Assembly: GCF_000143415.4 (NCBI RefSeq)
Contig: NW_003314273.1
Location: 2,604,719 to 2,668,718, forward strand
Length of the DNA stretch: 64,000 nt
Source of the DNA: Selaginella moellendorffii
Taxonomy: Eukaryota > Plantae > Lycopodiophyta
Reading direction: 5' to 3'
In this document: positions 30,801 to 63,938 of the stretch, piece by piece
Layout: the number at the start of each line of letters is the position of its first letter
Position numbering within the stretch: position 1 is the first letter of the stretch
Position numbers and translations under genes: made by a program
Notes under the pieces: generated by a model
What the model saw: only the letters and a program-made list of their open reading frames with translations
Told to the model about the DNA's origin: nothing
Database searches by the model: none

Positions 30801-31860
30801 AAATTAGTATGGTTCATACACATGCATTTTCTGCCATTAATTTAGCATTACAAGATATAAAAACAAATGAATTACCTTTTGGAGGAATTGTTATTATTAC
30901 AAGTGGTGACTTAGACAAACACTACTAGTTATTCCACATGGTTATTGAGCACAAATTGTTTCAAATTCAGTAAAAATGAATAGGTTATGGAAAGTTTTTA
31001 GAACACTCACACTAAAAAGGAATATGAGACTAAGTGAAAACAACTCTTTATAGACTGATTGACTTCTTCAAATTGGAAATGGTAATAATTATGTGAATTT
31101 ACCAATTTGCCTTCAAAATCTATTGTATTACCTTACACATGGTAATAATATCCTCTATTGTTGATTTTATTTTCCCATCTCTACAGAATATTTTAGACCC
31201 CTACATTGCATCTAATAGAGTCATACTTACCCCACTTAATGATGATACTTTTCCTACTAATAATGCTATAGTCTCTTCCTTACCTAGTGATATACATATT
31301 TATAAAAGTGTTGACTTTGTTGATACTAAACACCCAAAAGATTTTTCAATTCAATTCTTAAATTCTATTACTCCTAGTCTTCTACTATATAAACTCTTGC
31401 TTAAAGAAGGTATTATCCTTATTCTATTAAGGAATATATGTCCATCGACTGGACTATATAATGGGACACGCCTCATACTTAAACATGCCATCCCAACAGT
31501 TCTAGATGATGAAATTGTATTAGGCCAATTCAAAGGTACACGAGCTTCCATCCATTGAATCACACTCACACCTTCAGACACAAAAATTCCATTAAAATGT
31601 CTAGAAGACAATTTCTAGTGCATTTAGGGTATTGCCTTACAATCTCTGAATGTCAAGGCCAAACATTTGACCAAGTCGGAATACATTTACCACATCCATT
31701 TTTCACCCATAGCCAACTTTATATGGCTTTATCAAGATGCACATCACTAGCAGGATTAGGTATTAAAGTATAGAACACATCACTCCAAGGATAGTTATTC
31801 CCTTTGAGTCCTTCTACTTTCACTATTAACACAATATATAAGGAGGGTTTATATTAAATC
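27868..31860 (+). pseudogene. Helitron Rep/PIF1-helicase, heavily degenerate
   Basis: YNSALAFAS, FKIHGEIYH, YGQLY, DPMVYLLIFPFG..GW, QQYIVDA, ILPSTFGG..QNYQDAMAI, FITFTCN, IAWTGIASTLL..GQTLH, WDEISM, LLRN..GLYNGTRL, QGQT..VG..HSQLYMALSR. Confidence 0.92.
28996..29083. repeat. 42-bp-arm inverted repeat (hairpin) inside the Rep remnant
   Basis: Arms at 28996-29037 and 29042-29083, two mismatches, 4-nt loop CCTA. Confidence 0.95.
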
Positions 31861-33460
31861 CTCCATACATTGTTTGTAGCATTGAAACAAATTTTTGATC
31901 AAGAATGCTGTCCTATTAACAAGCTGTTTTATTTGTTCATTAGACTTAACATTCAAAACAGTATTTGTTAACAAGACAACATATGCTGGGCAAGTGCTAG
32001 TCTATCATAATAAGGAGGGAGTGCCAAAATTTCTGGGCCGCCAGATCCAGCCAATCGTAATCGTCTGATAGGGGGTAACTGTAAAGGGGTTATTTTTTTA
32101 ACCACATCTGTAGCACATGTGGTTTTAACCTTTTATCCTATGGTGATTTACCATAGGATAACACCACGAAGCTGAACTTAAACCCTCTTTATGCCACGTG
32201 ACAGATGCCACATGTCCATAGGAACCCGAGGTTCAAGGCTTTGGGCCACTGAACGAAGGAACGGTGCCAAACTCCCAAGCGTGAAGCTAAAGGGTGATGG
32301 AACCGAACCACGGAGCAACTCCCAAGCATAAAGCCTAAGGAGGGAAGGAACGGGAGCCCGGAGCGACTTGGAACAATCCTGGAGCAACCAACATCCCAAT
32401 GCTAAGACTAGCATGCAAAATGCAGCCAAACGGAGTCTGGCGCTATTTTGGCATACCGGTGGCCTAACGCGAGGATATAGGTACTCCACCAGCTAGCATG
32501 GAATAGAACTTGGGCTTAGACCCAAGCCGGACGTAGAACAAGGACAGGCACGCAAATGGGAGCTAGACTATGCCTCAGGTTGGTTGGCCATGCCCGACCT
32601 ACCCACTATCCCTACTATACATCACTCCAAAGATAGTTATTCCCTTTGAGTCCTTCTACTTTCACTATTAACACAATATATAAGGAGGGTTTATATTAAA
32701 TCCTCCATACATTGTTTGTAGCATTGAAACAAATTTTTGATCAAGAATGCTGTCCTATTAACAAGCTGTTTTATTTGTTCATTAGACTTAACATTCAAAA
32801 CAGTATTTGTTAACAAGACAACATATGCTGGGCAAGTGCTAGTCTATCATAATAAGGAGGGAGTGCCAAACTTTCTGGGCCGCCAGATCCAGCCAATCAT
32901 AATCGTCTGATACGGGGTAACTGTAAAGGGGCTATTTCTTTAACCACATCTGTAGCACACGTGGTTTTAACCCTTTATCCTATGGTGATTTACCATAGGA
33001 TAACACCACGAAGTTGAACTTAAACCCTCTTTATGCCACGTGACAGATGCCACATGTCCATAGGAACCCGAGGTTCAAGGCCTTGGGCCACTGAACGAAG
33101 GAACAGTGCCAAACTCCCAAGCGTGAAGCCAAAGGGTGATGGAACCGAACCACAGAGCAACTCCCGAGCATAAAGCCTAAGGAGGGAAGGAACGGGAGCC
33201 CGGAGCGACTTGGAACAGTCCTGGAGCAACCAGCATCCCAATGCTAGGACTAGCATGCAAAATGGAGCCAAACGGAGTCTGGCGCTATTTTGGCATACCG
33301 GTGGCCTAACGCGAGGATATGGGTACTCCACCAGCTAGCATGGAATAGAACTTGGGCTTAAACCCAAGCCGGACGCAGAACAAGGACAGGCACGCAAACG
33401 GGAGCTAGACTATGCCTCAGGTTGGTCGGCCATGCCCAACCTACCCACTATCCCTACTAT
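31777..33460 (+). repeat. 842-bp tandem duplication spanning the Helitron junction and an LTR end
   Basis: Units at 31777-32618 and 32619-33460, with ACAT microhomology at the breakpoints. Confidence 0.95.
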
Positions 33461-47028: not shown

Positions 47029-48228
47029 ATGGCTTCTTCCAAGACGATGCTCCATCCTCCTCCAAATGGGGGCGTCGGCCCGCAGCGCTCCGGCCTGGGC
47101 CGCCAGGGATCAATTTACTCGCTCACACTGGAGGAGCTCCAGAATTCAATGCTGGACCAGGGAAAAATCGGCAGCATGAACATGGACGAGTTCATGAAGA
47201 ACGTATGGACGGCCGAGGAGAACCAGGGCGGCGCCGCCAACACCAACACCAGCACCGCCACCTCCACCGCCACCGACAACCCGCCCGCTCCCTCCTCTCT
47301 CCAGCGGCAATCCAGCGTAAGTATCCCTCGAACTCTCAGCCAGAAAACAGTGGACGAGGTGTGGAAGGAGATCCAGGTCCAGAAGCAGCAGCAGCAGCAG
47401 CAAGATCTCTCTTATGGAGAGATGACTTTGGAGGACTTTCTCATCCGGGCCGGGGTGGTGAAGGAGGACACGGATGCTACTTCCGGGGGTGTCGTCCAGG
47501 CAATCGGCCCCCAAGGAACCATACCCAACAGCATCGATTCCATGGCTCAAAATCCAGATTGGTACAACTATCAGGTGAAGCAGCAGCAGCTCATGCACCA
47601 AGCTGCCGATTTCTCGAAAAGGCCGAACTTGATCGTCCCTGCGGGGCATCCCGGCGCGTTTTTCGATGCTCCATACGATGCCGTGCCCAGCAGCCTGGCT
47701 CTCTCCCCCGGGATGGCGACTCCGGAGGCTCCCGGCAAGAAGAGGAGCTTGGATCTCGTCGTGGAGAAGACTGTGGAGAGGCGGCAGAGGAGGATGATCA
47801 AGAACAGGGAGTCGGCGGCGCGGTCACGAGCGAGGAAGCAAGTAAGTCGCACTTTTGACCAAAGAGGCTTTTTTTCTACTCTTTTTTCCTTGTTTTTTTT
47901 GCAGGCTTACACAGTGGAGCTAGAAGCCGAGCTTACGCAGCTCAAGGAAGAAAATACCAGATTGAAGAGATGGCAGGTAAGATTGGATCACTCGTGATCG
48001 ATCCAGACACTAAAGACGATGATGCTTTTCTTTTGATTTTTTAGGCCGAGGAAGCAGAGAGGAGAAGAAAACAGGTAACTTGCATTGCTGGAGAGAGTTT
48101 TACAGCTTTGTTACACCGTGTTTCTGACGCAGATAACCGAGGTTTTCCTGCCAGTAACGCAACAAGATCAGCAGCAGCACGCAAACGCGAGCTCACAAAA
48201 GCTTCAGAGGTGCCGGAGCTTTCCCTGA
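47029..48228 (+). CDS. ABI5: Group A bZIP transcription factor (ABI5/ABF/AREB family), ~336 aa; exons 47029-47841, 47905-47976, 48045-48074, 48133-48228
   Basis: C1 RQGSIYSLTLEELQ and GSMNMDEFMKNVWTAEE; C2 LQRQSS..RTLSQKTVDEVW; C3 GEMTLEDFL; basic region RRQRRMIKNRESAARSRARKQAY; C-terminal RCRSFP. GT-AG introns keep the frame. Exact orthology within the ABI5/ABF family is not resolved. Confidence 0.92.
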
Positions 48229-48869
48229 CTTCCATTTAACTCCACAGGAATCGGGTTGTAAAGTGGGGGTCTCGCTCGCTCCTCAAGCCATCGCAAAGAT
48301 CTTCCCTTGATCTTCCGGGCCTGAGGAAGGAGAGCGAGATCGATCACCACTAAAAACACAGGAAAACGAATAAGGTAAGCAGCAGATCATCCAGCAGCAG
48401 CAGCAGTAGCAGCTCTCATGTACCTCATCAGACACGGCGGCCATGTACATTCGAGTTGGAAGTGCGTGTATCTAAAACAGAAGCAAGGCAAAAGCAGCGG
48501 TTTTCCTTTAGGTGGTTTGTTCGTTCCGAGAGGTTAGTGACGAAGCTGGTTCTTCTAGCATTTGTGAGGATCTGTAGTTTAAAGGAAGCAAGCATTTGTG
48601 AAATCAGACGGAAAAAAAACAAGTGAAATTCTTTTCCAGCTTATCTCTCGATCGATCGCGAAGCGTTTTGTTTCACGTGAAGAAGAAGGAAGTGGTCCAG
48701 CCCAGTCCAGTCCGGCTCTCAATTAAAAGAGAGCTGTGCTTTTGTCTCGCGCGCTCGCAGCGCCGTCGTTGGCCATTTCCACAGGCCAATCATCAGGCGC
48801 TGCAAAATGGTGCCAGCTGAATCCATCGAGCTTTCCGTTGCGAGTTTGGTGTTTTGGTTCCATGTCGAC

Positions 48870-50990
48870 TCAGGGGCTCCATGTGTCCCGCCTCGGACGG
48901 GCCGGATGATCTGAGCTCTCCGGACGCAAGCGGCTTTTAGCGTGTCTGGATTGGATAAGTTTCTCGAGCAAAGCCATCGTAAAATTTACCTGGAGCTTTC
49001 CTCCCACCGCATAGGCACTCGGGGACTTCGCTCTCGCCGGGCGAGAGAGTTTAGTAGCTTGGCTTTTGTTTACCTTGTCCAATATTTCTGCCACCATGTT
49101 TTGCATGACAGTCAAGGTTCTTCTCATGCCGTGAGCCGACTTCAGAGAAGGTCTCCTCTTCAAACAGCTGCCTGACGATCTCCACTACGTCGTCCAGATC
49201 TTGGAGAGAGCACCTTCAGCTTACAATGAATAAACGATTACCGGTGACAGTGAGTAAAACAAGAAAACAAGCATGCCACTATTGGCTTCTCGCCCAACCG
49301 CGAGTTTGGCTGCTGGATTGTCTGCATCTAGATGATCGTTAAGCGCGTAGATTTTTCAATCTAACGAGTGAATTCGAGCGTTGAGCAGACTTGAGACCTC
49401 AAACGTTCGCATTCTCCCTCCGCTTTGAGCAGTGACTGCTCTAGATCATATCTTGATCTCTCAGTGTTGACCCTGGGTTTGTTTTTTATTTCCTTGGCCC
49501 TGTCTTCGCATTCATAAAGGGAAAGCTTTCTACCGACTAAATCTACTTCTCGAGATGTAAAGCCATGGGAGGCAGCAGCACTAAAGGTTTGTGTCCAAAG
49601 CGTAGCGTAGAGAGCGTTCCGGCTGCATTATATGAGCCCGAAGAGCAGCAATAAAGTAGATATTGTCCGTGAGTTTCCACCCTGTGCGGCATAAGATCAA
49701 AAGGACATGAAATTACTGTTAACGCTCGAGAGTTACCAAGGACTCTTGCAAAATCCTCGTCAGCTTTGAGTCATGGTAAGGTAGAGGGAGCCAAGTCAAC
49801 GGGGAGTAAGGGGAGCCAAAACAGTTGACTAAAGAATATTCTGTTACAATAACCAAAGCATTCATCACATTTCCAAGAGCTGAAAGCGATTTATTGATTG
49901 TCTTAGCCTCCGTTAGGAGTTTTCCTTTCCTTCGGTGCATGTTTTCTCAGATCCAGCAAGGTCTACCAGGAACAGCTTTCCGGTTTTCACGCTGCAAAGA
50001 GACGATGATAAATAAGAGACGAAAAGAAGGGAACGTTTCTTTTACCTCGGTTATCAAGAACACACAGTGGCTTCTGCTGCTATTGGCGTTCATATCTGAA
50101 ATGTTAGGAGACACACGCAGCAAGTCTTGTTAAGCCTCGCTCCCACAGCTCTATTCAAGATTCCTGCCTGTGTACTGTGTATAAGCTTTAAGTTAGAATG
50201 GCCAAAGCAGCAATCAATCAATTGTTAGATTGTCACTATAAGCTATCAGCCCTCGAGTTAATCTAGGACGGGCGCTCTCGTCACCTCTGAAGCACCAGCG
50301 ACAAATATTCCGAGTGTTTTATCTTCCTTTACTTGAAGATTGTCCTTGGTCGAGTCCAAAATGTATTAAAGTCTCGAGCAACTTCTATTCTCTCCACCTA
50401 TTCACAAGCGATATAAGAAATATAAAACCTTACCATGGACAGCTTGATGACAAACTCGTACACCGGGTCAGCAGTCTCTATGTACTGGAAAATCCATCGT
50501 GCCACCCTCGGTAGAATTCCCTCTTGGCAATGATCATCAGTGCCCTGAGACGTCTCTCCACGAAATGACCCGTAAGAACAAAGGAGAAAACGCTACCTCC
50601 ATACTGAAAGTCATTGCAGCACCAGTCTAGAAAATAAAACAAAGCGTTGTGATACATGGATAGCTCTCATCGCATGAATGATTCGTGAGAGTACCTGTCA
50701 ACCGTAAAGTTGATGGGATTCATAGCATCTTTGTTTACAATTCCATGAGTAAATCTCAGACATTCGATCAAAACTTACCCTGAACAATGGGAAGCGCGAC
50801 GAAGTCGAAAACATCCGCTTGAGATCTCTGTCTAAAGAAAACCGATCTCTCCTGAATGAAAGCGCGACTGTAAATCGTCCAATGCAGCTGGCGCTTACCT
50901 TGAAATCGAAGGATCGATCGTGCGGGATGCGAATGCGGCTGGATTCGCTCCAGCGCTCGCGATCTCTCAGACATTGCACGAATAAACGAA
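48870..50990 (-). pseudogene. Degenerate duplicate of the kinesin gene
   Basis: Colinear with 52755-55200. The start region is lost, multiple deletions are present, and the DLAGSE region is frameshifted. [12 protein letters not shown] and [15 protein letters not shown] remain. Confidence 0.88.
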
Positions 50991-51232
50991 ACGAAGCAAA
51001 AGAACCATTAGAACAAGACCCCGCCCAACCACGGAAGTGAAGACGCCATTGGAGGCGATGGAAGATGACAGCGACGCAAAAAATGCGTCTCATGCTTCAG
51101 GATTGGCATTCAAAACAGCATATAGATAAATAGTTCATTATTGGTAGCAGTTAGACTTGTATTCTCTGGAGCGCTGCAAGCTTCAAAATCTTTATTACAT
51201 AGTTTGGCATAGCATCATAGTTTGGCAACTCC

Positions 51233-52020
51233 TTAAATGATGCTAAACGCCCCCATGGGCGTGATCCGAACAGAACCGGATGGGCACGTCGAATAGATGA
51301 CACCGATGCCTTTCATATATGATCTGGTACTTGCATATCCAAAGAACGAGACTATGTTGCCTGGTGCCGTTTCGAAGAAAGTGCCGCTCTTCGAATCACC
51401 AAATGGACCATATGTTTTGGTTACACCAGTTTTCATGTTCTTGACATGCACGGTCAGCGAAACAACACCTTCTCCCGCCCCACCAGCACCGCAGGTTTTG
51501 TCTGTTCCAGTTGTACCTGATAACTTGTAAATGTACTCGTCCGAGCTCACAGAGATCTGCAAGAAAGAAATTGATAATGTAAGAAAAACGTTAGCTTAAA
51601 ACAGACCTCGTAGAGTGTGCCTCTCAGACCAGCTTGCGGAGGCGGCTTTGGTAAGCATCCTGAACAGGAGTTCGTTCCATACATTTGAGTCCAAGAAGAA
51701 CCCGAAGGCTTCCACTGAATGGCATCAACCACACAACCGCTGATTATGCGTAGCCCCTCCAGTGGCGTACTCGTAAGACTTCCACTGAAGGGAGTACCAC
51801 CACTAGTAGTACCATATAAAGGAGACTTGCAAGGTGGAGGCGGTGGAGGCGGCGACGAACACCATGGGACTTCGTTGCCACAGTTTCCCCATGGACTACA
51901 GCAGGGGTATGCCTCCGGGCAGTCAGCGTCGGATGAACATGAACCAGGAGGAGGGGGTGATGATGGTGTTGCCGATACCAGCAAACACAGTGCAAAGAGC
52001 GCTAGAGCACGAAGAAGCAT
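51233..52020 (-). CDS. Secreted chimeric lectin: signal peptide, SP4, 6-Cys hevein-like domain, SP7 linker, jacalin-like domain; 245 aa; exons 52020-51607 and 51556-51233
   Basis: Hydrophobic N-terminus; CSSDADCPEAYPCCSPWGNCGNEVPWC; jacalin-type G..GG.PF, IISGCVVDAIQ, EYIYKLSG, VVSL, KTYGPFG, IVSFFG and GIGV. A 50-bp GT-AG intron joins the two ORFs in frame. Confidence 0.85.
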
Positions 52021-52754
52021 GGTTCCAATGACTTATGCAAGTCACAGCAATGCAAGCACACATTTATAGGACTGTAAAGCAGCGACTGATTGTTTTCAGC
52101 AGGCACCGCTGCGTGTTTTCAGACCTGTGGTCCGCCCATGTGATCTCGGCCGCCTCAGTTGGCCTTGTCAGAGATACTTGTCACCATTTTAGATGGACCA
52201 CAGAGGCAAAGCCTAATTTACAAAGTGAACACCACCACCAGGAACACTATTCCTTCTTCAGGTTCCACATGCATGGCTCTGGTCCAAGATTTCGAATCTG
52301 TACGTAATAAGTCGTCCAAAGATACTTGATGTTCAATTGTAAACGAATAAGGTAAGGTAAGCTGTAGTTTTACAGCGAGCAGCCCACGTCCACAGCAATG
52401 ACAGCTCTCATGTATCAGATGCGGCGGCCATGTACATTCGAGTTGGAAGTTCGTGCATCTAAAACAAGAGCAAAGCTGCGGTTTTCCTTTAGGTGGTTTG
52501 TTCGTTCCGACGAAGCTGGTTCTACTAGCATTTGTGGGGATCTCTAAACAAAAGATAAGTGAAATCATTTTCCAACTTATCCTCTCGATCGATCGCGAGC
52601 TCTCAATCAAAACAGTGTGGTGCTTTTGTCTCGCGCTCGCAGCAACGGCATCGTTGGCCATTTCCACCAGCCAATCATCAGGCGCTGCAAAACGTTGCCA
52701 GCTGAATCCATCGAGCTTTCCGTTGCGAGTTTGTTGTTTTGGTTCCATGTCGAC

Positions 52755-55232
52755 TCACGGGCTCCATGTGTCCCGCCTCGGACGGGCCGGATGATCTGAG
52801 CTCTCCGGACGCAAGCGGCTTTTAGCGTGTCTGGATTGAATTGGAAACAAACTTAAGTTTCTCGAGCAAAGCCATCGCAAAACTCTACCTGGAGCTTTCC
52901 TCCCACCGCATCGGCACTCGGGGACTTCGCTCTCGCCGGGCAGCTGCCAAAGCGAGGCCAGAAAAGACATAAAGAAGAGTATAGTAGCTTGGCTTTTCTT
53001 TACCTTGTCCAATATTTCTGCGATCTCGTCCACCGTGTTTTGCATGACAGTCAAGGTTCTTCTCATCTCCTCGTTTAAAACGGCCGTGAGATCGGCATCC
53101 GGCACTTCAGAGAAGTCGCCAAGAAGGCCCTCCTCTTCAAACAGCTGCCTGACGATCTCCACTACGTCGTCCAGATTTGGTGTCTTCTTGGAGAGAGCCA
53201 CCTTCAGCTACGATGGAAAAACACGATTATCACTGCCAGTAAGTAAAAACAACACAAGAAAGAAAGATTACCTTTTCAAGCATGCCACTGCTGGCCTCTC
53301 GCCCAACCGCGAGTTTGGCTGCTGGATTGTCTGCAAAAAAAGCCGTCTAGATGATCGTTAAGCACGTAGATTACTCTATACCTTCTCCAGTTAACGAGTG
53401 AATTCGAGCGTTGAGCATTATGACTTGAGACCTCAAGCGTTCGCATTCTCCCTCCGCTTTGAGGAGTGCCTGCTCTAGATCATATCTTGATCTCTCAGTG
53501 TTGACCCTGGGCTTGTTTTTTATTTCCTTGGCCCTGTCTTCGCATTCATAAAGGCCGGCCCCTTGCTTAAAAATTGGAAAGCTTTTTACCTTAGTCCAAA
53601 GCGTAGCGTAGAGAGCGTTTCGGCTGCATTATATGAGCCCGAAGAGCAGCAACAAAGCAGAGTCGTCCGTGAGTTTCCACCCTGCGCGGCATAAGATCAA
53701 AAGAACATATGAATTTACTGTTAACGCTCGAGAGTTACCAAGGACTCTTGCAAAATCCTCGTCAGCTTTGAGTCACGGTAAGGTACATGGCACGCTTTCT
53801 CTGCGAAAAACGATTGCATTCTTTTGCCAGCCACGAAGATTGCTTACCACAGGTCAAAGCATTTATCACATTTCCAAGAGCTGACAACGATTTGTTGATT
53901 GTCTTAGCCTCCGTTAGGAGCTTTCCTTCGGCGCATGTTTTCTCCACTTTCTCAGATCCAGCAAGGTCTACCAGGAACAACTTTCCGGTTTTCACGCTGC
54001 AAAGAGACGATGATAAATAAGATCTTATCCCTCACGAAAAGAAGGGAGCGCTTCTTCGACCTCCTGTCCTCCGAGTTCGTTTGCTGAATGGTTATCAAGA
54101 ACACACAGTGGCTTCTGCTGCTATTGGCGTTCATATCTGAAATGTTAGGAGACACACGCAGCAAGTCTTGATAAGCCTCAGGATACTCGTCGCTCCCACA
54201 GCTCTGTTCAAGATTCCTGCCTGTGCATAAGCTTAAGTTAGCATGGCCAAAGCAGCAATCAATCAATTGTAGGTACCTTCACAGTCTTGAGCATCTCTTC
54301 CTCCGACTGAAGATAAACCTGTCACTAAGCAATCAGCACTCGAGTTAATCTAAGACGGACGGTCTCCTCACCTCTGAAGCACCAGCGACAAATATTCCGC
54401 GTGTTTTATCTTCCTTTACTTGAAGGTTGTCCTTGGTCGAGTCCAAAAGATCTCTGCATGACAATGACGAAGTATTCAAGTCTCGAGCAACTTCAAAACC
54501 ATCGCAGCCTCGACCTTATTCTCTCCATGTAGATCTCCACCTATTCACAAGCGAATATAAGAAATACAAAACGATATACGAACACCTTACCATGGACAGC
54601 TTGATGATAAACTCGTACACCGGGTCAGCAGTCTCTATGTACTGGAAAATCCATCGTGCCACCCTCGGTAGAATTCCCTCTTGGCCAGGATCATCAGTGC
54701 CCTGCGACATCTCTCCACGAAATGACCCGCAAGAACAGCCGAAATATTACCTCCATACTGAAAGTCTTTCCAGCACCAGTCTAGAAACGAAAAACCAGAG
54801 AAGAAAACAGTGACATGGGTACCTCTCATCGCATGAATGATTCGTGAGAGTACCTGTCCATACGCAAGAACCGTCCCGTTGATGGCATTCATAGCATCTG
54901 CGTTTAAAAATCCAATGAGCAACGAATTAAATCTCACAAAGCGAAGGCAATTGATCAAACCTTACCCTGCACAATTGGAAGGGCGACGAAGTCAAAGACA
55001 TCGCCTTGAGGCGATCCCTCGTTGAAGACCCTGTCAAAAGAAAACCCGATCGCTCCCTCTTTGTCGTCCTGAATGAAATCGCGATTGTAAATCGTCCAAT
55101 GCAGCTGGCGCTCACCTTGAAATCGAAGGATCGATCGTCCAGGATGTGAATGCGGCTAGATTTCGCTCCAGTGCTCGCGATCTCCCGGGAATTGCACGGC
55201 CGGAAGCGAACGCAAACGGAAACACTTGACAT
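52755..55232 (-). CDS. Kinesin-1 (KHC/PSS1-like) motor protein, multi-exon; 3' end approximate
   Basis: [106 protein letters not shown]. Short tail. Confidence 0.85.
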
Positions 55233-56149
55233 TGAGACAAAACCCTATTTCTACTGAAGTACAATTAGTTTAAAGTATTGCCCTAAAATCTATATCTCTT
55301 TTTGTTTGGCTTCCGAGCTCAGTTGGTGGTGCAGCTGGATAATGTCTATCACAGAAGTGGAAGGAACTTATTGATCATGCAAAATAACTCTAGCCCAGTT
55401 TAGCTCTGAATTTTCTTCTAATATTTTTTTAATGGGCTGTAGCTCACCCATTAACTTGATCCAGCCGTTGGCAGCCGTCGGCAGCTGTCGGATCAAGTTA
55501 ATAGAAGAGTACCATGAAAATTGAACAAAGAGAAAAGGAAAAACAAAAGAGCCCTAACTTAAGCAAGTGGTTTGAATTTAAACTAATTTGAAAATTATCA
55601 AAATCCCACTATACAGCATCAAAACCATATAACTAAACCTCATGGTCTAGATTGTATAGAAATGATAGACCAATGGACAGCCAAGATTTAGGATGGCAAT
55701 TCTTGCATTCTTGCTTGATACTCACCTGGAAGGAGGAGTTTCCAGGTAGGGCAAGCACATTCCTGGGCGAGCCAGGCATTAGCCTGGCGAGTGTGTTCGG
55801 GAGGGAATGAGTGAGCCCATGCCTGGTTAATAGGTTGTGGTGAGACTGTTAACAGACACATGGGATAACATTATTCAAGGATGAGAGGGTTCTCTAGAAC
55901 CTGGCAGGTGGCAACCAGGTTCTTGCAAAGAACCTCCTCCTTCTCCTCTTTAGACTTTGAAGTAGTAGTTGTAATTGTTTGATGTTATGCAATTATAACA
56001 CCAATTAAATTTAGTTAATGGTGGGGTTCACAATACATGGTGTAATTTTTTTTCTTTTGCTTGTCTGGCCAAATTTCTTTAATGGGAATCTTAAAGATGA
56101 TGTGTATTATTGGTTTGATCACTTTATAATGAGCAACCAACCTCACATC

Positions 56150-59100
56150 ATCCCCTTCTTTTAGAAGGATAAAAGGTAATTAGGATTATTTAGTGGGTTA
56201 AAATCTAAAGAAACATTAGGAGGAGGCATTGGTGGATTTATAGACAATGTGATTTTTTTAAAATCCTTTTGTACAAAGCATTTAATTGCTATATATACAT
56301 AATTTTTTAAGGATTGGTTTATTAATGTTGTAGTGAATCTCATAATTTGCAATCCAACTTACCACAATATTTGATATGGTCCTTTCTACTGAGCAAGAAG
56401 CCCATTAGACAAACCACATACTATAACATTGAGAAAATGAATTAACACTATATAATTTATTTTATACTTTATAGGTGGACAATGATGAAAGTTGTAGCCC
56501 CATTGTTATCCCACTTATACATAGCCTAAGTGTTCAACAAACTTTATTTAAATAAGTGGGCAAATGCTCATCAAATATTGATCCCAAGACCTAACATTAG
56601 TACCTTATAGTAATCCTAGAGGTAAATTAAACACCATTTTGGCAATATCAAATCATAATTATATAAGAGTTTATATTGTGAAACATCAGTGGAACTCTAT
56701 ACGCTTATGATATTTATATACACAAGAAATAACAAATAACCATCCTAATTCGAATGTTAGAAGTTTGAGATTAGTCAAATGCCTTGTTGACTGGCCGAGA
56801 TTTCGAGGATATCAGTTGGTTCATATATTTCACAAATTTTTTTTTAAGGTTTGAATAAGCCATTCCACTAAACTATTTATTTATGGATGATAAACACTTA
56901 TAAAAATGTGATGTATCCCCAATCAAAACATCAAGATATGAAATACCCCAGACATAAATGCAAGACTATTATCTAAAAGAATCCATTATAAACAAGAATG
57001 TTGAAACACCACTCAATTGAAGAGGAAATACTTAACAATTATTGTACATGCATTGGTAAGAGCATGAAATTCCACTTAATAAGTCAAATAGTCAGAAGGA
57101 ATAATGATGTAGTTATTGCCAGTTGACTATGGCAATGATTCCATTAGATCAAATGCCACCAACTCAAATAGATAGGAAACTGCAATTAACTCTAATTATC
57201 ATTTTGTAATATGAGAGGGAGTATTATAGGTTTCACACCAAATGCAACTATATATATACTAGATAATATTATATTATATATTCTGCTAATAAAAAGACTT
57301 GTGTAGCTTCTTAGTCATACAACAATATTCCATATGCCCACTATGTAAAAGTTATAATAAGCATGGGAAATATGTGGAATAAAGATCAAAGGCACTATTA
57401 GCTATAAATGGTCATTAAGATTAGTCCTCATAAAGTTATAAATGTTGTCACAAAATTATGAGAATATAAATTTTTAAATAATAAATCATTAGCAAATAAT
57501 GTAGAATTCTCAAATCCAGCACAAAGTCTTTGTATCTATGATTTAACCTTTTAAGCCTTATAAACCTCATTAAAAGAAAGTAATTCTAGTTTACGAAACA
57601 CTAAATATTAAATATAGTAACCGTTGATGGTGATGAAGGAAGAAAAAGAGTTTTAGATTTTATTTCTCCAATACAAGATTTTAAATGATCTCTTTTATAA
57701 TCCATATTTGGTACTCCTTTAGGTGTTTTCTAGGATCCATTGGTGCTTGTTGCATGATTATCAGGTATTATCCATATGTGGAAATCCCTGTCATGAAGTG
57801 GTGACGTGATCAAAAGTGATCTTTTGGTGAAGGGGGTTGACAAAGATTTTAGCCTTTCTCTATGCTATTATAAAGTTATTGTATCCAAATTTGGTGGTTA
57901 GTAGTGCACCATCTCTATATGCTTTGTGCTTTAAGAGAAAGAGAGAGGAGAGGGATTTCTATTAACTCTTAATTTTATATTTTTCAAAGAAGTAAGACTT
58001 AAAGAAAGATTATTGCAAAACTAGAAAAGAAAACTTAAATTAAAATCACTCCATACTTCATGCTCTAATGCTTTGTGTCATGAAGGGCTCCTCCTTATAT
58101 AGTCCTTAAAACATAGTTTATGTTTTGTTGTTGATATCATAAAATATTGATGTAGGAAAGGTTAGATTTATATGACTAATATATATTACATAAGAAAATA
58201 TTTTTAAATGGTGGCAGAAATCTTTGCAAGGTTGGAAGGTATGCTTAAATATAAGAGTTATATAAGAAATCATTTTACAAAGATGGTGGAACATAAGGTA
58301 CGTAGAGTGGATAGGTAATAGAATGAATATAAGATATAGAAAAAAAAAGAGTGTTTTTGAGGTTATAAAGAAAAGGTGGTGGTAGAATAGTAAAGTGGTT
58401 GGTAGGGGTATAGGGGGGATGATTTTATCTATATACACCTTGTACATATATATATTTTTGACTTTGAATATGGCATTTTTGGCTGAAGATTCCCATCACA
58501 ATGATATAGGATTCTCATTTAGCAAATCCATTAATCATAGAATAATAAGCTTGTTAGGAATATGAGAAGAGAGCAAAGACGGGAGAGAAGCTTAAGAAAG
58601 GGTGTTAGCATCAATTGTAGAACTCCCCTAGCAATAAATAACATCGAAGCTTCAAAATTCATCAAATAACATGATTGACTAAGTTTTTTTGCTACAATAA
58701 TGAAGTGACTGCAATAATAACATTTAAGAACTATGCAAGTAAACATAAAGCTTTTTGAAACCCTAAATAGCTCTTAGACACTCTTTTTCTATTGCGGAGT
58801 AGTTCACTTATGCTGGTTGCAATGTATGATTGATATATAAGATGAGATGATGCTGACTTCACACACTCGTACTCTCTTACATCAACATACTTTTGAAACT
58901 AATATTGAAAGTATTCATATACAAGATGAAAGGTCAAGTGTAGTAAAACTAAAGTATCCATCAACACCTCTTTGAGATTCATAAATACTCACTCACAATC
59001 CTTGGACAAGGAGAAAGATAATATTAATAACTTCAACAATACTTGCAATATTGAAATGCTACTAGAAATATAATCAATAAAATGACTAAGATATTACATT

Positions 59101-61100
59101 TTGCTAAGGAAGCATTATATATTGGTCACATACTTTAAAGTAAAAAACTTCAAAATAGCTATAAGAATTTGCAAACTTTGGTAAAAAATGTGGCATCCAA
59201 GCTAAGTTATGTCCTTGGACCTAAATATACACTTTAAAACCAACTTTTTGTAACTAATTCAATACTTTGCAAATATCATGGATGTGCTCCTCCCATATCC
59301 TTTTCAAGTGGATCAAGACATTATTGATGAAATTAGTAATCACCTTCAGCATATTACAAAGAACCTCATCTATCATCTGCTAAAAAGTCACGAAAGCTCT
59401 GAACAAATTAAACAACATTACTAATAAAAACTAAATGAGGTATAGAAAATAATTTTGGAAATATCTTCTTTAGCCATTGGTACTTGCCAATACTTAAAAA
59501 TAATATTCAACTTAGTGAACTAACAACTTCTCCCTAAATTATCTACAAGATTAATAATGTAAAGAAGAGAGTACACATCTGGGATTATCACATTATTTAA
59601 TGGTAGTCAACATAAAATTAAATATTCTCATCAAAATTTCTCATAATATAAGGTTTATATACCCAAAGATTCCAAAACTTTTAAATAACACCTTTCTCAA
59701 ACATTTACTTGTAAGGTCTTAATATGTTTTAGTGATCAACACTGAAAAAAAACCTTGATCAGACTAGCATCCCTAGTTAGAATAAGATGACATATTGCAA
59801 TCTTCACCCCACAAAATCAAAGAGATCAACATACTTTTACTTAAGCCAGTCATGCCATAATATAAAGACTGTTTGAGAGGGTGAATAAGAAGGAAACATG
59901 GTAAGAAATAATCAAGAGATTAAAGTAATGGAAGTAGAAGTAGAAGCTAAAAGATAATATAGAATAAAAATGAGAGGAATAAAAGAAATATAAGGAACTA
60001 CAAAGCAAGAGAGAGAAGCCTCAAAATCACATTTGGCATAATTTTGTTGCAACTAATTCATACCAAGGATGAAATCAAAAACTTTACTCAAAACCATTTG
60101 TAATGATTGGAACTCAAACTTAAAATCACCCATATGCACAACTAAACCCACCTAATCCCACATACACATATGTGTATGGCCATTGCCATAGATAATGAAG
60201 ATTAACTTTGTTATACAATTAAATATAGATAGTAACATCTGGCAACAAATTGAGTAATAGAAGATAAACTTAAATATATGTATCAACTAATACAAAGAGG
60301 ATTTTAAAGGATCTCTTGTTATAAATTTGAGCTTGGAAAGTGAATATTGGATGAATTGGTGGCAAGTGAACCCCTTGATAATATTCCTAGAAAAAGGATA
60401 GAGGGGTCATTGACTTATTCACATAAAATCTTTTATTATTTATATAATTCCTTGTTTCTTGTAAAATTTTTAATATCAAGACCTTCCACCATAGTAGTAC
60501 TAATAAAACATTGTTAACACCAAAGCCTCCACCCAAGAAATTAAAGACACTAATCTAGGATCTACTGATAATGCCAATATGTATAGCTAACCTTATCACA
60601 TGCCTAACAATGAACATTACAACTATAATTATATCCTCGTCTATAGGCAACAATATTATCAACTTCCATTAGAATATGATCACCTCCCACAAGAGGAGTT
60701 GAAGCATATTCAACTACAAGTGGGAGAGATGATATCTTATGACATTATGTTAGTGGAAGAGTATTGTTAAAGGTGGTTGGGGCAAGTGTATCCATAAGTC
60801 CCAAAAGATTTTGATGAAGTGTTAGCCACAACATACAAAATTTGATCAGCCCTAACATATTCAGTTCCACATGAAACAATAGACTTTAAAATATATTTAG
60901 CTCCATATGAAACAATAGACTCCGAAATAACTATGCTTGACTTAGATGGCCCTTGATTACGCAATTGCTAAAAAACATCATAATAGTTATTAGTATGTCC
61001 AAATATGCACTTAAAGTTGTATGGGAGTCTATGCTTAAACCATTATTGCAATGCCATCCCTTAAAGATATAAGGGAAACTTGCATAAATACTAAATATCA
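56150..61100 (-). mobile_element. Highly degenerate Ty3/gypsy element remnant
   Basis: PPT-like AAAAGAAGGGGA-TGATGTG (minus) at ~56145-56163. Integrase remnant at 56160-57400 resembles 5430-6600. Faint gag-like (GMALQ.WF..QLRNQG) and protease/RT traces further right. Boundaries are uncertain. Confidence 0.55.
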
Positions 61101-62175: not shown

Positions 62176-63938
62176 TCACATTTTACTGAGTACAAGCGGC
62201 ACTCCATGCATAGGCTTCAAGCCAAACTTCATTGCAGGATTATGGCGGTAGCTTGGTGAAAGCCGGAACAAGAATCGCTGTAGTATCATAGCCAGAATGA
62301 CTTTGGCTTCGATCATCGCAAACGACTGGCCCACGCAAACCCGCGGCCCAAACGAAAACGGCATGAAAGCATTGGGATGCTTGCACGCTCTTGAGATCCC
62401 ATCTTTGAAGCGATCCGGATTGAATTGGCCTGCATCTTCTCCCCAGAGCTCCTTATCCTGATGCAATCCAGCGATTGCAAACGACACAGATACTCCTTTT
62501 GGAACGTGTAAATCTTGCAGCCAAGACTCCTCCACACACTCCCTGGTCACCTCGTTTGCTGGTGGATACAGCCGCAGGGTTTCATAAAGGATCATTCCCA
62601 CCTGTTCAAGAATCAAGAAGTTAAGTTTTGGAATTACGAGATATTGATCGACTTACAAGCTTGAGCCTGCTGACACTCTCGTCATCAGGAATCTCATTGC
62701 CACATACTTCGTGTACCTCAGCACGGGCACGTTCTTGCCATTCAGGATAGCCTCCCAGTAGCATCAAAGTCCAGGTTAGTAAGGTGGCTGTGGTCTCATG
62801 CCCCGCAATGTAGAATGTCTTGCATTCCTCTATCAGATCCCTGCTTGTGAAATTACTGCTGCTGTCACACTCCTTTAGCATCAATCCGAGTAAGTCATTC
62901 CCGTATGTATTGCTCCTCCCTGACTTCACTGAGTTCCGACGCTCGTCTATGATCCCAGTGATCAGAGAATCCAACTCCTGATGAAGCTTCCACAGGCGGA
63001 GGTTGACTGGAAGTGGGAGAAACCTGTAAGCAAGTGATTATGATTCAGTTCAATAGATGATCCAGCATACCTGAAGCCTGGAATCCAGGAAAAGCTGATG
63101 AGTCTGGGCACTAGCTCTGGGACTTTCTTAGACAATATCTCGAAAACTCTCTGCCCTTTGAGATAGCTAGTTCCAAATGCTGTATGGGAGATAACGTCTC
63201 CTGTGAGCTTACGCACCTCTCCAGAGATTTCAATCTCGGGATTCTGCTGTCTCGTAGCTTCCCATTGATCAAGCATGCGAGATGCGCACCCTGCGATTGT
63301 ACCGGTCATTTGCTGTGTACAGGAGAATAAAAAACACTTATCAGCCAGACTTCATTGGAAGATAATAGTATGAATATCCACTTTAATACGTTCATGAAAA
63401 AATGCCGGTGCTACGAGTCGGCGGTGATGACTCCATTCCTCTCCAGTAACAAAAACCAATCCACGACCAAAGAACAAGTTCGCCAACCGCAGCTCGGCCT
63501 CCGATTTATCAAACTGAGACAACTTCTTAGACAAAACCTCCCTTACGATCTCGGGCTCCGAGACCGATATCCTTGGCTCAGTTCCCCACCAGAACACAAA
63601 TCTCTTCCCTGGACCATGATCATCAGAAACGAAACTTTGAGATTCATCAGTGATGACATGAACGTACCATATTGCTTCTGCCATTTGAGCAACGCAGGAT
63701 GTACCCGATGGAAGACGTCGTGGCTGAAACTTTCCATGTCGTGATCCTTGATGGCGCTCCTCATGTTCTGGATTTCAGCTATTTGGCCTACCATGAATCG
63801 GGGTGGAGGCCCCTGAATGCCCTCCTTCTTCAGCTGCGTGGCGATCGCCCTGGGGCGCCACCAGTAGACCGTCACGAATCGCCATAGCACTGCAGTGAAG
63901 AGGATGATGCAAATGCTCAAGATCCATCTCTCTTCCAT
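62176..63938 (-). CDS. Cytochrome P450, CYP72 clan, 510 aa; exons 63938-63668, 63608-63382, 63312-63071, 63023-62657, 62601-62176
   Basis: N-terminal membrane anchor, GI.GPP hinge, AGHETT, ETLRLYPP, PDRF, FSFGPRVCVG. Five GT-AG exons sum to 1533 nt in frame. Confidence 0.93.

What the first reader, a model, noticed from the sequence alone, without database searches (positions are those of the whole stretch)
51233..52020. Secreted hevein-like + extensin-type linker + jacalin-like chimeric lectin
Seen: signal peptide, SPPPP, a 6-Cys hevein-type module (CCSPWGNCG, with one aromatic position replaced by N), SPPPPPPP, then a jacalin-like beta-prism domain with extra cysteines and loop insertions. 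The gene is intact and has one 50-bp intron. Established: hevein domains bind chitin, Ser-Pro(n) runs are hydroxyproline-glycosylated as in solanaceous lectins, and most plant mannose-binding jacalins lack signal peptides. I do not know a characterised plant protein joining these two lectin folds. Inference: a dual-specificity apoplastic defence lectin bridging fungal chitin and mannan/galactan. This is the strongest novelty candidate in the window.
Basis: partly seen in the sequence, partly recalled or inferred. Interest (0 to 1): 0.78.

Follow-up and report, generated by a model that had tools for sequence, protein, structure and literature searches.

The report
Secreted hevein-jacalin chimeric lectin, spikemoss
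A real, spliced and expressed spikemoss gene encodes a small secreted protein that joins a six-cysteine chitin-lectin (hevein-type) knot to a jacalin-type lectin domain, but key sugar-contact residues are changed in both halves, databases already hold the gene labelled as jacalin only, and this scan has reported a sister copy before.

Summary
On the minus strand, 52020-51607 and 51556-51233, split by a 50-bp GT-AG intron, encode 245 aa. This equals Selaginella moellendorffii SELMODRAFT_410458 (XP_002969631.1; GL377577.1). RNA-seq reads cross the splice joint and carry letters unique to this copy.

The C-terminal part is a jacalin beta-prism: it passes the Pfam cut-off, and its AlphaFold model matches OsJAC1 and banana lectin. 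The N-terminal knot misses the Pfam hevein cut-off. It nevertheless belongs to a six-cysteine CBM18 subfamily: an exhaustive search links it to proteins that pass PF00187, an HMM built from those alone scores it 38 bits (shuffles at most 5.7), and the subfamily profile finds wheat germ agglutinin and hevein.

The proposed dual chitin plus mannan/galactan binding is not supported. The jacalin GxxxD aspartate is a lysine (K220), and one of the hevein aromatics is Asn46.

The layout has a syntenic counterpart, two more intact copies and one broken copy in the same assembly. Published surveys list a paralogue as jacalin only. They report hevein plus jacalin only with a kinase, in Chlamydomonas.

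This scan already reported the same kind of gene on other DNA (s1-418396). Verdict: a new variant of known kinds, of moderate interest, with function untested.

The parts
52063..52068 (-). TATAAA box, 43-48 nt upstream of the ATG
   Evidence: Read directly from the sequence. RNA read ends cluster at 52019-52029 (table 6), which fits a start about 30 nt downstream. Function is inferred.
51607..52020 (-). Exon 1 (codons 1-138): signal peptide, SP4, hevein-type knot, SP7 linker and the first half of the jacalin domain
   Evidence: Translation. It is 100% identical to P0001 residues 1-138 and is covered by RNA reads.
51970..52020 (-). Predicted signal peptide (res 1-17, ending VSA before TP)
   Evidence: The only hydrophobic 15-mer of the protein, mean Kyte-Doolittle 2.6. 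The cleavage site is inferred from the -3/-1 rule; no predictor was run.
51946..51960 (-). Ser-Pro4 extensin-type motif (S21-P25)
   Evidence: Sequence. Hydroxylation and arabinosylation are inferred from general knowledge of plant HRGPs.
51859..51939 (-). Six-cysteine hevein-type (CBM18) knot, C28-C54; Asn46 (51883-51885) sits at the second loop-3 aromatic position
   Evidence: Pfam PF00187 scores 16-19 bits against a cut-off of 27.8. The exhaustive search links it to proteins that pass PF00187. An HMM built from foreign modules only scores it 38.3 bits against at most 5.7 for 5000 shuffles. The subfamily profile hits WGA at 4.5e-21 and hevein at 3.6e-6.
51832..51858 (-). Ser-Ser-Pro7 linker (S55-P63), followed by Cys64
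   Evidence: Sequence. It is kept in P0004 and P0005.
51557..51606 (-). 50-bp GT-AG intron, inside the jacalin domain
   Evidence: The joint 51556->51607 appears in two raw RNA-seq runs (30 and 91 reads, 24 and 50 distinct starts) and in two contig runs. The intron is kept, at 48 nt, in the paralogues.
51233..51556 (-). [quoted passage not shown]
   Evidence: Translation. Pfam Jacalin scores 29.5 bits on this exon alone. A 351-nt RNA contig matches it with no differences (table 8).
51275..51828 (-). Jacalin-type beta-prism domain (res 65-232, interrupted by the intron); Lys220 (51311-51313) replaces the GxxxD aspartate
   Evidence: Pfam PF01419 scores 32.4 bits against a cut-off of 22. The AlphaFold2 model has pLDDT 81. 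Foldseek against the PDB gives probability 1.00 and TMt 0.78-0.84 to OsJAC1 and banana lectin.
51236..51274 (-). C-terminal tail (res 233-245) ending in the conserved MGAFSII; predicted disordered
   Evidence: pLDDT is below 50 for model residues 174-186. The tail end is identical in P0001, P0004, P0005 and P0002. A role as a vacuolar sorting signal is only an idea.
51191..51196 (-). AATAAA, 37 nt after the stop codon
   Evidence: Sequence. RNA coverage fades between 51155 and 51205. Function is inferred.

Best explanation
This is an expressed Selaginella moellendorffii gene (SELMODRAFT_410458) for a small chimeric lectin-type protein that enters the secretory pathway. After the signal peptide come a Ser-Pro4 motif, a six-cysteine hevein-type (CBM18) cystine knot, a Ser-Ser-Pro7 spacer, a divergent jacalin beta-prism and a short conserved hydrophobic tail.

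Shown here: the gene model, its splicing and transcription, the jacalin fold, and the homology of the knot to hevein/CBM18 modules.

Inferred: the knot is the carbohydrate-binding part. It keeps Ser42, Trp44 and Trp53 of the four GlcNAc-contact positions but has Asn46 in place of the second aromatic, so it probably binds chitin oligomers weakly or with altered preference. The proline runs are probably hydroxylated and arabinosylated into stiff spacers, as in solanaceous lectins. The jacalin domain has lost the canonical GxxxD aspartate (Lys220; Arg in sister subfamilies), so it probably does not bind mannose or galactose in the classical way. It may instead serve as a carrier or scaffold, or have a remodelled ligand site. 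The most likely biological role is as a wall or apoplast (or vacuolar) defence-type protein aimed at chitin-bearing organisms.
For: Gene model.

Splicing and transcription: one search shows the joint in 30 and 91 reads. Letters unique to this copy are read at 51869 (109 reads in X22), 51990 and 51708. One search confirms that those letters distinguish this copy from all paralogues.

Jacalin: Pfam 32.4 bits against a cut-off of 22; AlphaFold2 pLDDT 81; Foldseek probability 1.00 to solved jacalin-related lectins; the ESM Atlas model also matches jacalin clusters.

Hevein:
- Seven of nine weak PDB hits are hevein-type.
- The exhaustive phmmer search links residues 24-79 to P0007 (E 3e-18), P0008 (1e-12) and P0013 (5e-6). 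These pass PF00187 with 114, 38.9 and 71 bits.
- The cysteine spacing is identical.
- An HMM built from the foreign modules alone scores it 38.3 bits against at most 5.7 for shuffles.
- The subfamily profile finds WGA, pokeweed lectins, Ac-AMP2 and hevein.

Loss of the jacalin aspartate.

Purifying selection: it is stronger on the knot than on the jacalin part (dN/dS 0.36-0.80 overall). All 12 mature cysteines are kept in the intact copies.
Against: - The knot misses the Pfam gathering score.
- Its AlphaFold model is mediocre (pLDDT 68). Fold searches cannot tell hevein from knottin (E at least 0.3, Z about 2.2).
- One aromatic that stacks on GlcNAc is missing, so chitin binding may be weak or lost.
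- No binding, localisation, glycosylation or induction data exist.
- There is no W-box within 1 kb upstream.
- dN/dS near 0.7-0.8 between loci, and one broken paralogue, are compatible with partly relaxed constraint.
Confidence: 0.55

Rival explanations
1. Dual-specificity lectin. Both modules bind sugar: the hevein knot binds chitin and the jacalin domain binds a second glycan. The protein would then bridge two polymers, for example fungal chitin and another wall glycan. In view of the Asp-to-Lys/Arg change, the second ligand would more plausibly be a non-canonical, possibly anionic glycan than mannan or galactan.
For: Both folds are present on one secreted chain. The basic residue that replaces the GxxxD aspartate is kept across the Selaginella secreted jacalin subfamilies: K in P0001, P0004 and P0005; R in P0003, P0009 and P0011. 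That looks like a conserved remodelling rather than decay. The Gly-Gly of the first loop is kept.
Against: The canonical GxxxD aspartate and glycine are both replaced, and the loop carries a 2-residue insertion. A published survey finds only one of three jacalin motifs in Selaginella jacalin domains, and the motif it says holds the sugar-binding Asp is not that one (PMC6362431). The jacalin part evolves with dN/dS near 1 between loci.
Confidence: 0.15
2. Cargo-carrying precursor of a hevein-like peptide. Prohevein carries a Barwin cargo and Ee-CBP a chitinase cargo. In the same way, this chain would be cut in or after the proline linker, releasing a free 6C hevein-like antimicrobial peptide and a separate jacalin protein.
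For: The layout of signal peptide, hevein-like peptide, hinge and C-terminal protein is the described precursor organisation of hevein-like peptides (PMC5374622). The knot has the 6C framework of Ac-AMP2, which is the top PDB hit.
Against: According to that paper, known 6C peptides have cargo-free tails. The hinge is a pure Ser-Pro7 run with no Asn/Asp or dibasic site, and contiguous hydroxyproline is typically protease-resistant (general knowledge). Cys64 sits at the end of the linker and needs a partner among the four subfamily-specific cysteines of the jacalin part. That would tie the linker to the cargo (inference).
Confidence: 0.15
3. Neither module binds sugar. The knot would act as a knottin- or WAP-like protease inhibitor or protein-binding module, or the protein would be a structural hydroxyproline-rich wall protein, with the family drifting under weak constraint.
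For: Weak Pfam WAP and squash-inhibitor similarities. Knottins tie with hevein folds in the fold searches. Key sugar-contact residues are changed in both modules. There is one broken paralogue and dN/dS reaches 0.8.
Against: The subfamily profile scores hevein-type chains 15 orders of magnitude better than squash inhibitors. Ser42, Trp44 and Trp53 are kept. Four intact copies keep all cysteines, and at least two are expressed.
Confidence: 0.1

Closest known systems
6C hevein-like peptides (Ac-AMP2 of Amaranthus caudatus; PDB 1zuv/1mmc)
   Same: Six cysteines with the CC-x5-C-x6-C core, and the CCS-x-W/F-G-x-CG motif. Ac-AMP2 is the top PDB sequence hit of the knot and is hit by the subfamily profile at 5e-7.
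   Different: Here the first half reads C-x-S-D-x-D-C-P with x5 spacings. The second loop-3 aromatic is Asn, and the loop-4 aromatic is Trp rather than Tyr. The module carries a large protein cargo, whereas described 6C peptides are cargo-free (PMC5374622).
Cargo-carrying hevein precursors (prohevein with Barwin domain; Ee-CBP and class I chitinases with GH19)
   Same: Signal peptide, N-terminal hevein module, hinge, then a C-terminal protein.
   Different: The cargo is a jacalin beta-prism. It is not a Barwin/DPBB domain or a chitinase. The 2023 census of ten Selaginella hevein genes lists only chitinase and lytic-transglycosylase partners and does not include this gene.
Solanaceous chitin-binding lectins (potato and tomato lectin: hevein domains plus an extensin-like Ser-Hyp4 domain)
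   Same: Hevein-type module(s) joined to Ser-Pro(n) runs in a secreted protein. NCBI's pipeline even names a Selaginella sister protein (P0006) 'chitin-binding lectin 1'.
   Different: There is one knot rather than two to four, the proline runs are very short, and a jacalin domain is present. Glycosylation has not been shown here. The comparison rests on general knowledge of those lectins.
Mannose-specific jacalin-related lectins (banana lectin, OsJAC1 lectin domain, Heltuba, Parkia lectin)
   Same: Beta-prism I fold, Pfam PF01419 and a conserved YGPFG core.
   Different: This protein has a signal peptide, two inserted loops (one holding a CxxC) and six extra cysteines. The GxxxD motif is replaced by S-TR-SYM-K. 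Sequence similarity to plant JRLs is too low for phmmer to detect, apart from Parkia lectin at E 0.004.
Chlamydomonas reinhardtii hevein/jacalin/protein-kinase protein (Van Holle and Van Damme 2019, PMC6362431)
   Same: It is the only published Viridiplantae architecture found here that combines a hevein and a jacalin domain.
   Different: That protein also carries a kinase domain and is from a green alga. It was listed in a survey, not characterised.
Selaginella jacalin - proline linker - C-terminal Cys-rich module proteins (P0003/P0006, P0011/P0019)
   Same: They share the secreted jacalin subfamily (42% identity, the same CxxC insertion and Arg at the Asp position) and the extensin-type linker.
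   Different: The domain order is reversed, and the cysteine module has eight or more Cys with no Pfam match. It is not a hevein knot.

Membership tests
Hevein / CBM18 (Pfam PF00187 Chitin_bind_1) | Scores above the Pfam gathering threshold (27.8 bits) | tested here: not met
   16.4 bits on the whole protein and 18.8 bits on the isolated module, E 0.002-0.011.
Hevein / CBM18 (Pfam PF00187 Chitin_bind_1) | Significant sequence homology to bona fide members | tested here: met
   The exhaustive phmmer search links residues 24-79 to P0007, P0008 and P0013 (E 3e-18 to 5e-6). These pass PF00187 at 114, 38.9 and 71 bits. An HMM built from those modules alone scores P0001 38.3 bits against at most 5.7 in 5000 shuffles. 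The subfamily profile hits WGA at 4.5e-21 and hevein at 3.6e-6.
Hevein / CBM18 (Pfam PF00187 Chitin_bind_1) | Cysteine framework with adjacent CC and CC-x5-C-x6-C spacing (cystine knot I-IV, II-V, III-VI) | tested here: met
   C28-x5-C34-x5-C40C41-x5-C47-x6-C54. The framework definition is taken from PMC5374622. The actual disulfide pairing was not testable.
Hevein / CBM18 (Pfam PF00187 Chitin_bind_1) | Chitin-contact residues: Ser19, aromatic 21, aromatic 23, aromatic 30 (hevein numbering) | tested here: inconclusive
   Ser42, Trp44 and Trp53 are present. Position 23 is Asn46 (Asp in P0005), while all 12 related foreign modules have Tyr, Phe or Trp there. WGA domain 4 also lacks this aromatic, reading WGSCG.
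Hevein / CBM18 (Pfam PF00187 Chitin_bind_1) | Hevein fold in a structural comparison | tested here: inconclusive
   The AlphaFold2 model has pLDDT 68. The best Foldseek E is 0.3, with knottins and hevein-type chains mixed. VIA gives Z 2.2-2.3, tied between EETI-II, WGA and SmAMP2.
Hevein / CBM18 (Pfam PF00187 Chitin_bind_1) | Binds chitin or GlcNAc oligomers | not testable with these tools
   Needs a chitin pull-down, ITC or NMR with recombinant protein.
Jacalin-related lectins (Pfam PF01419) | Scores above the Pfam gathering threshold (22 bits) | tested here: met
   32.4 bits over residues 74-225, covering profile positions 8-136 of 136. Exon 2 alone scores 29.5 bits.
Jacalin-related lectins (Pfam PF01419) | Beta-prism I fold | tested here: met
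   AlphaFold2 pLDDT 81 and pTM 0.79. Foldseek against the PDB gives 132 matches at E<=0.001, topped by OsJAC1, banana lectin and horcolin, with probability 1.00 and TMt 0.74-0.84.
Jacalin-related lectins (Pfam PF01419) | GxxxD sugar-binding loop (beta11-beta12), with the aspartate that holds the sugar hydroxyls | tested here: not met
   The phmmer alignment to mannose-binding Parkia lectin places Ser214 at the Gly and Lys220 at the Asp, with a 2-residue insertion. MAFFT alignments with canonical domains (GDLLD, GNLMD, GHLID) agree.
Jacalin-related lectins (Pfam PF01419) | Binds mannose- or galactose-type glycans | not testable with these tools
   Needs a glycan array or ITC.
Extensin-type Ser-Hyp(n) glycomodules (as in solanaceous lectins) | Ser followed by 3 or more contiguous Pro in a secreted protein | tested here: met
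   S21-PPPP and S55-S56-PPPPPPP lie behind a signal peptide.
Extensin-type Ser-Hyp(n) glycomodules (as in solanaceous lectins) | Prolines hydroxylated and O-arabinosylated | not testable with these tools
   Needs mass spectrometry of the native protein.
Cargo-carrying hevein-like peptide precursors | Proteolytic release of the mature hevein-like peptide from its C-terminal cargo | not testable with these tools
   The architecture fits, but no processing site is evident in the Ser-Pro7 hinge. Needs proteomics.

The most novel reading that the evidence does not exclude
Selaginella has evolved a lineage-specific family of secreted two-headed lectins. In it, a jacalin beta-prism has had its sugar-site aspartate replaced by a conserved Lys/Arg and recognises a new, possibly anionic glycan such as a uronic-acid-containing wall polymer. 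Stiff hydroxyproline spacers join this prism to interchangeable cysteine knots: an N-terminal six-Cys hevein knot here, and an unassigned C-terminal knot in sister genes. The protein would thus cross-link pathogen chitin to a second polymer. Such a modular 'knot plus prism' defence toolkit has not been described in any land plant.
Probability: 0.12. Interest if true: 0.65.

Novelty: new variant of a known kind. Interest (0 to 1): 0.4.

Why it matters
Hevein and jacalin are two of the best-known plant lectin folds, and published plant lectin surveys do not list them together on one small secreted chain in a land plant. In this gene family the hevein half is invisible to standard Pfam thresholds, so the family has been counted only as 'jacalin'. 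That has two consequences. Domain-architecture censuses undercount cryptic hevein modules. Lycophytes also hold lectin combinations unlike those of seed plants. If binding were shown, the protein would be a compact natural example of a six-cysteine hevein knot carrying a protein cargo, and of a jacalin domain with a remodelled site. As it stands, the gene is already in the databases, its family is tiny and confined to one species in the libraries searched, and its function is untested.

Tried and rejected
- Word-index protein search on the knot alone (P0001 region 18-66) found only the protein itself. It was uninformative, because the index needs shared 5-mers.
- The fold of the knot could not be settled. 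Foldseek and VIA wide cannot separate hevein from knottin at this size.
- Homodimer prediction of the jacalin part gave no verdict. It counts neither for nor against oligomerisation, so the idea that the beta-prism multimerises to give the knot avidity remains pure inference.
- A W-box (TTGACY) scan found none between 52021 and 53048, and the window as a whole has fewer than chance. The promoter gives no hint of defence induction.
- The combined alignment A3 mis-placed the N-termini of the jacalin-only rows onto the knot. It was not used for folding. A2 and A4 were folded separately, so the relative position of the two modules and the partner of Cys64 were not modelled.
- Pfam finds nothing in the C-terminal Cys modules of the sister proteins, so the earlier 'CBM1-like' label is not supported by Pfam.
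- Horizontal origin could not be resolved. The nearest non-Selaginella jacalin hits are an unnamed eukaryotic metagenome contig, a basidiomycete and a cyanobacterial MAG, at no more than 43% identity over about 95 residues. The gene has a Selaginella-type mini-intron and sits in a syntenic block.
- Handling of the spliced model: exons were searched separately by reference. The unspliced 157-aa ORF, also searched by reference, returned the database protein P0001, which was used thereafter. No hand-joined sequence was sent to any search tool. In one search the codon columns of the two exons were counted together inside a script, only to compute dN/dS.
Full report
**What is there.** The finding's coordinates hold a minus-strand gene.
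- Exon 1 (52020-51607) gives 138 codons and exon 2 (51556-51233) gives 107 codons plus a stop. They are separated by a 50-bp GT..AG intron at 51606-51557.
- I searched the exons separately by reference, and also the unspliced 157-aa ORF by reference. The ORF search returned a database protein, P0001 (245 aa), that is 100% identical to exon 1 followed by exon 2.
- P0001 is SELMODRAFT_410458 / XP_002969631.1 / UniProt D8RET8 of Selaginella moellendorffii. It is named only 'hypothetical', 'uncharacterized' or 'Jacalin-type lectin domain-containing protein'.
- The window stretch is letter-for-letter GL377577.1:2652951-2659738 of assembly GCA_000143415.2.
- All later work used P0001. No hand-joined sequence was sent to a search tool.

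**Is the gene used?** Yes.
- Two raw stranded RNA-seq runs read the joint 51556->51607 (skipping exactly 50 bases, CT..AC on the plus strand) with 30 and 91 reads from 24 and 50 distinct starts. Contigs of two other runs carry the same joint.
- Coverage runs from about 51180 to about 52030.
- A TATAAA lies at 52068-52063 and an AATAAA at 51196-51191, both on the minus strand. They fit these ends (inferred).
- In the 5' part of exon 1 most reads carry five other letters. These are the letters of the syntenic copy L004.
- At the three positions where the window differs from every paralogue (51708, 51869, 51990), the window's own letter is read 101, 109 and 49 times in run X22. This copy is therefore itself transcribed.

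**The C-terminal domain.**
- Pfam Jacalin (PF01419) scores 32.4 bits against a cut-off of 22 over residues 74-225.
- An AlphaFold2 model of residues 60-245, built on a 13-row alignment, has pLDDT 81 and pTM 0.79 and is all-beta.
- Foldseek against the PDB gives 132 matches at E<=0.001, headed by the OsJAC1 lectin domain, banana lectin, horcolin and Parkia lectin, with probability 1.00 and TMt 0.74-0.84.
- The ESM Atlas model agrees.

So this is a jacalin-type beta-prism. It differs from canonical members in four ways:
- a 12-residue insertion holding C119-x-x-C122;
- a second glycine-rich insertion with C160;
- further cysteines at 64, 96 and 229;
- a 13-residue tail ending in the conserved MGAFSII. 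Together with the first insertion (model residues 59-72), the tail is the low-confidence part of the model.

Most important is the sugar loop. The phmmer alignment to the mannose/glucose-specific Parkia lectin puts Ser214 at the Gly and Lys220 at the Asp of the G-x-x-x-D loop, with a two-residue insertion. MAFFT alignments with canonical domains that read GDLLD, GNLMD and GHLID agree. The sister Selaginella subfamilies carry Arg at that position. Van Holle and Van Damme (PMC6362431) state that a Leu, a Tyr and an Asp in their jacalin motif M3 are crucial for sugar binding. They also state that only motif M1 is recognisable in Selaginella jacalin domains. Canonical mannose or galactose binding is therefore not supported.

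**The N-terminal module.** On its own it fails the Pfam hevein threshold, scoring 16-19 bits against 27.8. Three further lines nevertheless establish homology.
- First, an exhaustive phmmer search of 1.84 billion representatives found only 14 proteins at E<=0.001. Four of them match the knot and not the jacalin part: P0007 (E 3e-18), P0008 (1e-12), P0013 (5e-6) and P0018 (1e-4). The first three pass PF00187 with 114, 38.9 and 71 bits as 6, 2 and 3 repeats. All are unnamed proteins from short ENA metagenome contigs, one of them a Tara Oceans scaffold.
- Second, their 12 modules share the exact framework of the Selaginella knot: C-x5-C-x4/5-CC-x5-C-x5/6-C, with C-x-S/T-D/N-x-D/E-C-P and CCS-x-W/F/Y-G. 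An HMM built from those 12 foreign modules alone scores P0001 at 38.3 bits, P0004 at 37.2 and P0005 at 33.7. The best of 5000 composition-preserving shuffles scores 5.7.
- Third, the subfamily profile finds wheat germ agglutinin (4.5e-21), pokeweed lectins, avenatide, Ac-AMP2 (5e-7), Urtica agglutinin and hevein itself (3.6e-6) among solved structures. Squash inhibitors appear only from 5e-4 upward.

The framework is that of the published '6C hevein-like peptides' (PMC5374622). Fold comparison of a mediocre model (pLDDT 68) could not separate hevein from knottin.

Of the four chitin-contact positions, Ser42, Trp44 and Trp53 are present. The second loop-3 aromatic is Asn46 (Asp in P0005), whereas every foreign module has an aromatic there. 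WGA's fourth domain shows a similar loss, reading WGSCG. From memory, that site is the weak one in WGA.

**Family and genome context.**
- The assembly holds four intact copies and one broken copy.
- L004 (SELMODRAFT_441296, on GL377580.1) is colinear with the window across about 16 kb, with a kinesin gene on one side and a bZIP gene on the other. Identity is 96-97% in those flanks but 93-94% in the lectin gene. It is the counterpart on the other scaffold, most simply the second haplotype.
- L005 and L006 (441276, two copies 30 kb apart, 99.9% identical) lie about 0.3 Mb away on GL377580.1.
- Their counterpart on the window's scaffold, L007 (410408), has a 3-nt and a 43-nt deletion in exon 1. 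These uncouple the knot from the jacalin part, and the 184-aa database model starts at an internal ATG.
- The intron is kept in all copies.
- dN/dS is 0.36 between the window and L004 and 0.63-0.80 between loci. The knot is more constrained than the jacalin part.
- More distant Selaginella relatives (P0003/P0006, P0011/P0019) have the same jacalin subfamily first, then a PPPSPPPP-type linker, then a C-terminal cysteine-rich module without a Pfam match. Cysteine knots have therefore been attached to this jacalin subfamily at either end.
- No protein outside the gene's own 50% cluster matched both modules. The libraries may lack other lycophytes, so this is weak evidence of restriction to the species.

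**Literature.**
- A 2023 census of S. moellendorffii hevein genes lists ten, with only chitinase and lytic-transglycosylase partners, and does not include this gene (PMC10378081).
- The 2019 survey lists paralogue 441276 simply as 'Jacalin'.
- That survey reports a hevein plus jacalin combination only for Chlamydomonas, as hevein/jacalin/protein kinase.
- This scan's earlier finding s1-418396 describes the same kind of gene on another piece of this genome, with the same conclusion.

**How it most likely works.**
- Shown: a secretory-pathway protein with a hevein-type knot and a jacalin fold, which is spliced and expressed.
- Inferred:
  - The knot is the sugar-binding head, probably with weakened or shifted affinity for chitin oligomers.
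  - The Ser-Pro4 and Ser-Pro7 runs become arabinosylated hydroxyproline spacers.
  - The jacalin domain, lacking its aspartate, is a carrier, a scaffold or a remodelled binding site.
  - The conserved hydrophobic tail could be a vacuolar sorting signal, so the 'apoplastic' location is open.
- Rivals are a true dual lectin, a processed peptide precursor and a non-lectin protein. Their probabilities and refuting tests are given in the Rival explanations section.
- A homodimer prediction gave no verdict, and the promoter has no W-box.

**Verdict.** This is a new variant built from two known lectin kinds. The gene is already in databases under an incomplete label, and the scan has already seen its like. 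Interest is moderate.

Noticed in passing
window 52525-55440 (-) and 48715-50980 (-): The lectin gene sits between a kinesin gene (553-aa model, Kinesin plus Microtub_bd) and a degraded partial kinesin duplicate that is 79-89% identical to the first. The same arrangement is found at the counterpart locus L004.
   Followed up: partly
window 47029-47997 (+): A bZIP transcription-factor gene (glutamine-rich, with a basic region near residue 251) lies downstream of the lectin gene. It is annotated bZIP_1/bZIP_2 at the counterpart locus.
   Followed up: partly
window 62176-63938 (-): Exons of a cytochrome P450 gene (Pfam p450, 129 bits on one ORF).
   Followed up: no
L007:9852-10603 (GL377577.1, about 281 kb from this gene): A paralogue broken by a 3-nt and a 43-nt deletion in exon 1. 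The hevein-knot ORF is still readable upstream, but it is out of frame with the jacalin part. The database model (410408, 184 aa) starts at an internal ATG.
   Followed up: yes
L005 and L006 (GL377580.1:1313778-1334563 and 1343780-1364565): Two copies of the gene 30 kb apart and 99.9% identical, encoding the same protein. This is either a very recent segmental duplication or an assembly duplication.
   Followed up: partly
P0003/P0006 and P0011/P0019 (other Selaginella scaffolds): Sister proteins with the order reversed: jacalin domain, then a PPPSPPPP-type linker, then a C-terminal module of 8 or more cysteines with no Pfam match. NCBI names two near-identical copies differently ('galactose-specific lectin' and 'chitin-binding lectin 1').
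   Followed up: partly
L001, L002, L003 (ENA metagenome contigs, one from Tara Oceans): Unnamed eukaryotic proteins made of 2 to 6 tandem six-cysteine hevein modules joined by Thr/Pro-rich linkers. They are the closest relatives of the Selaginella knot, and their organisms are unknown.
   Followed up: partly
window 28001-32000 and 56001-60000: Two 4-kb stretches with G+C near 0.30, against 0.40-0.48 elsewhere. They are probably AT-rich repeats or transposon remains.
   Followed up: no
window 51233-52020 versus L004:10001-10786: The lectin gene is more diverged between the two syntenic scaffolds (93-94% identity) than the flanking kinesin and bZIP genes (96-97%). It is about as diverged as the intergenic DNA.
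   Followed up: partly
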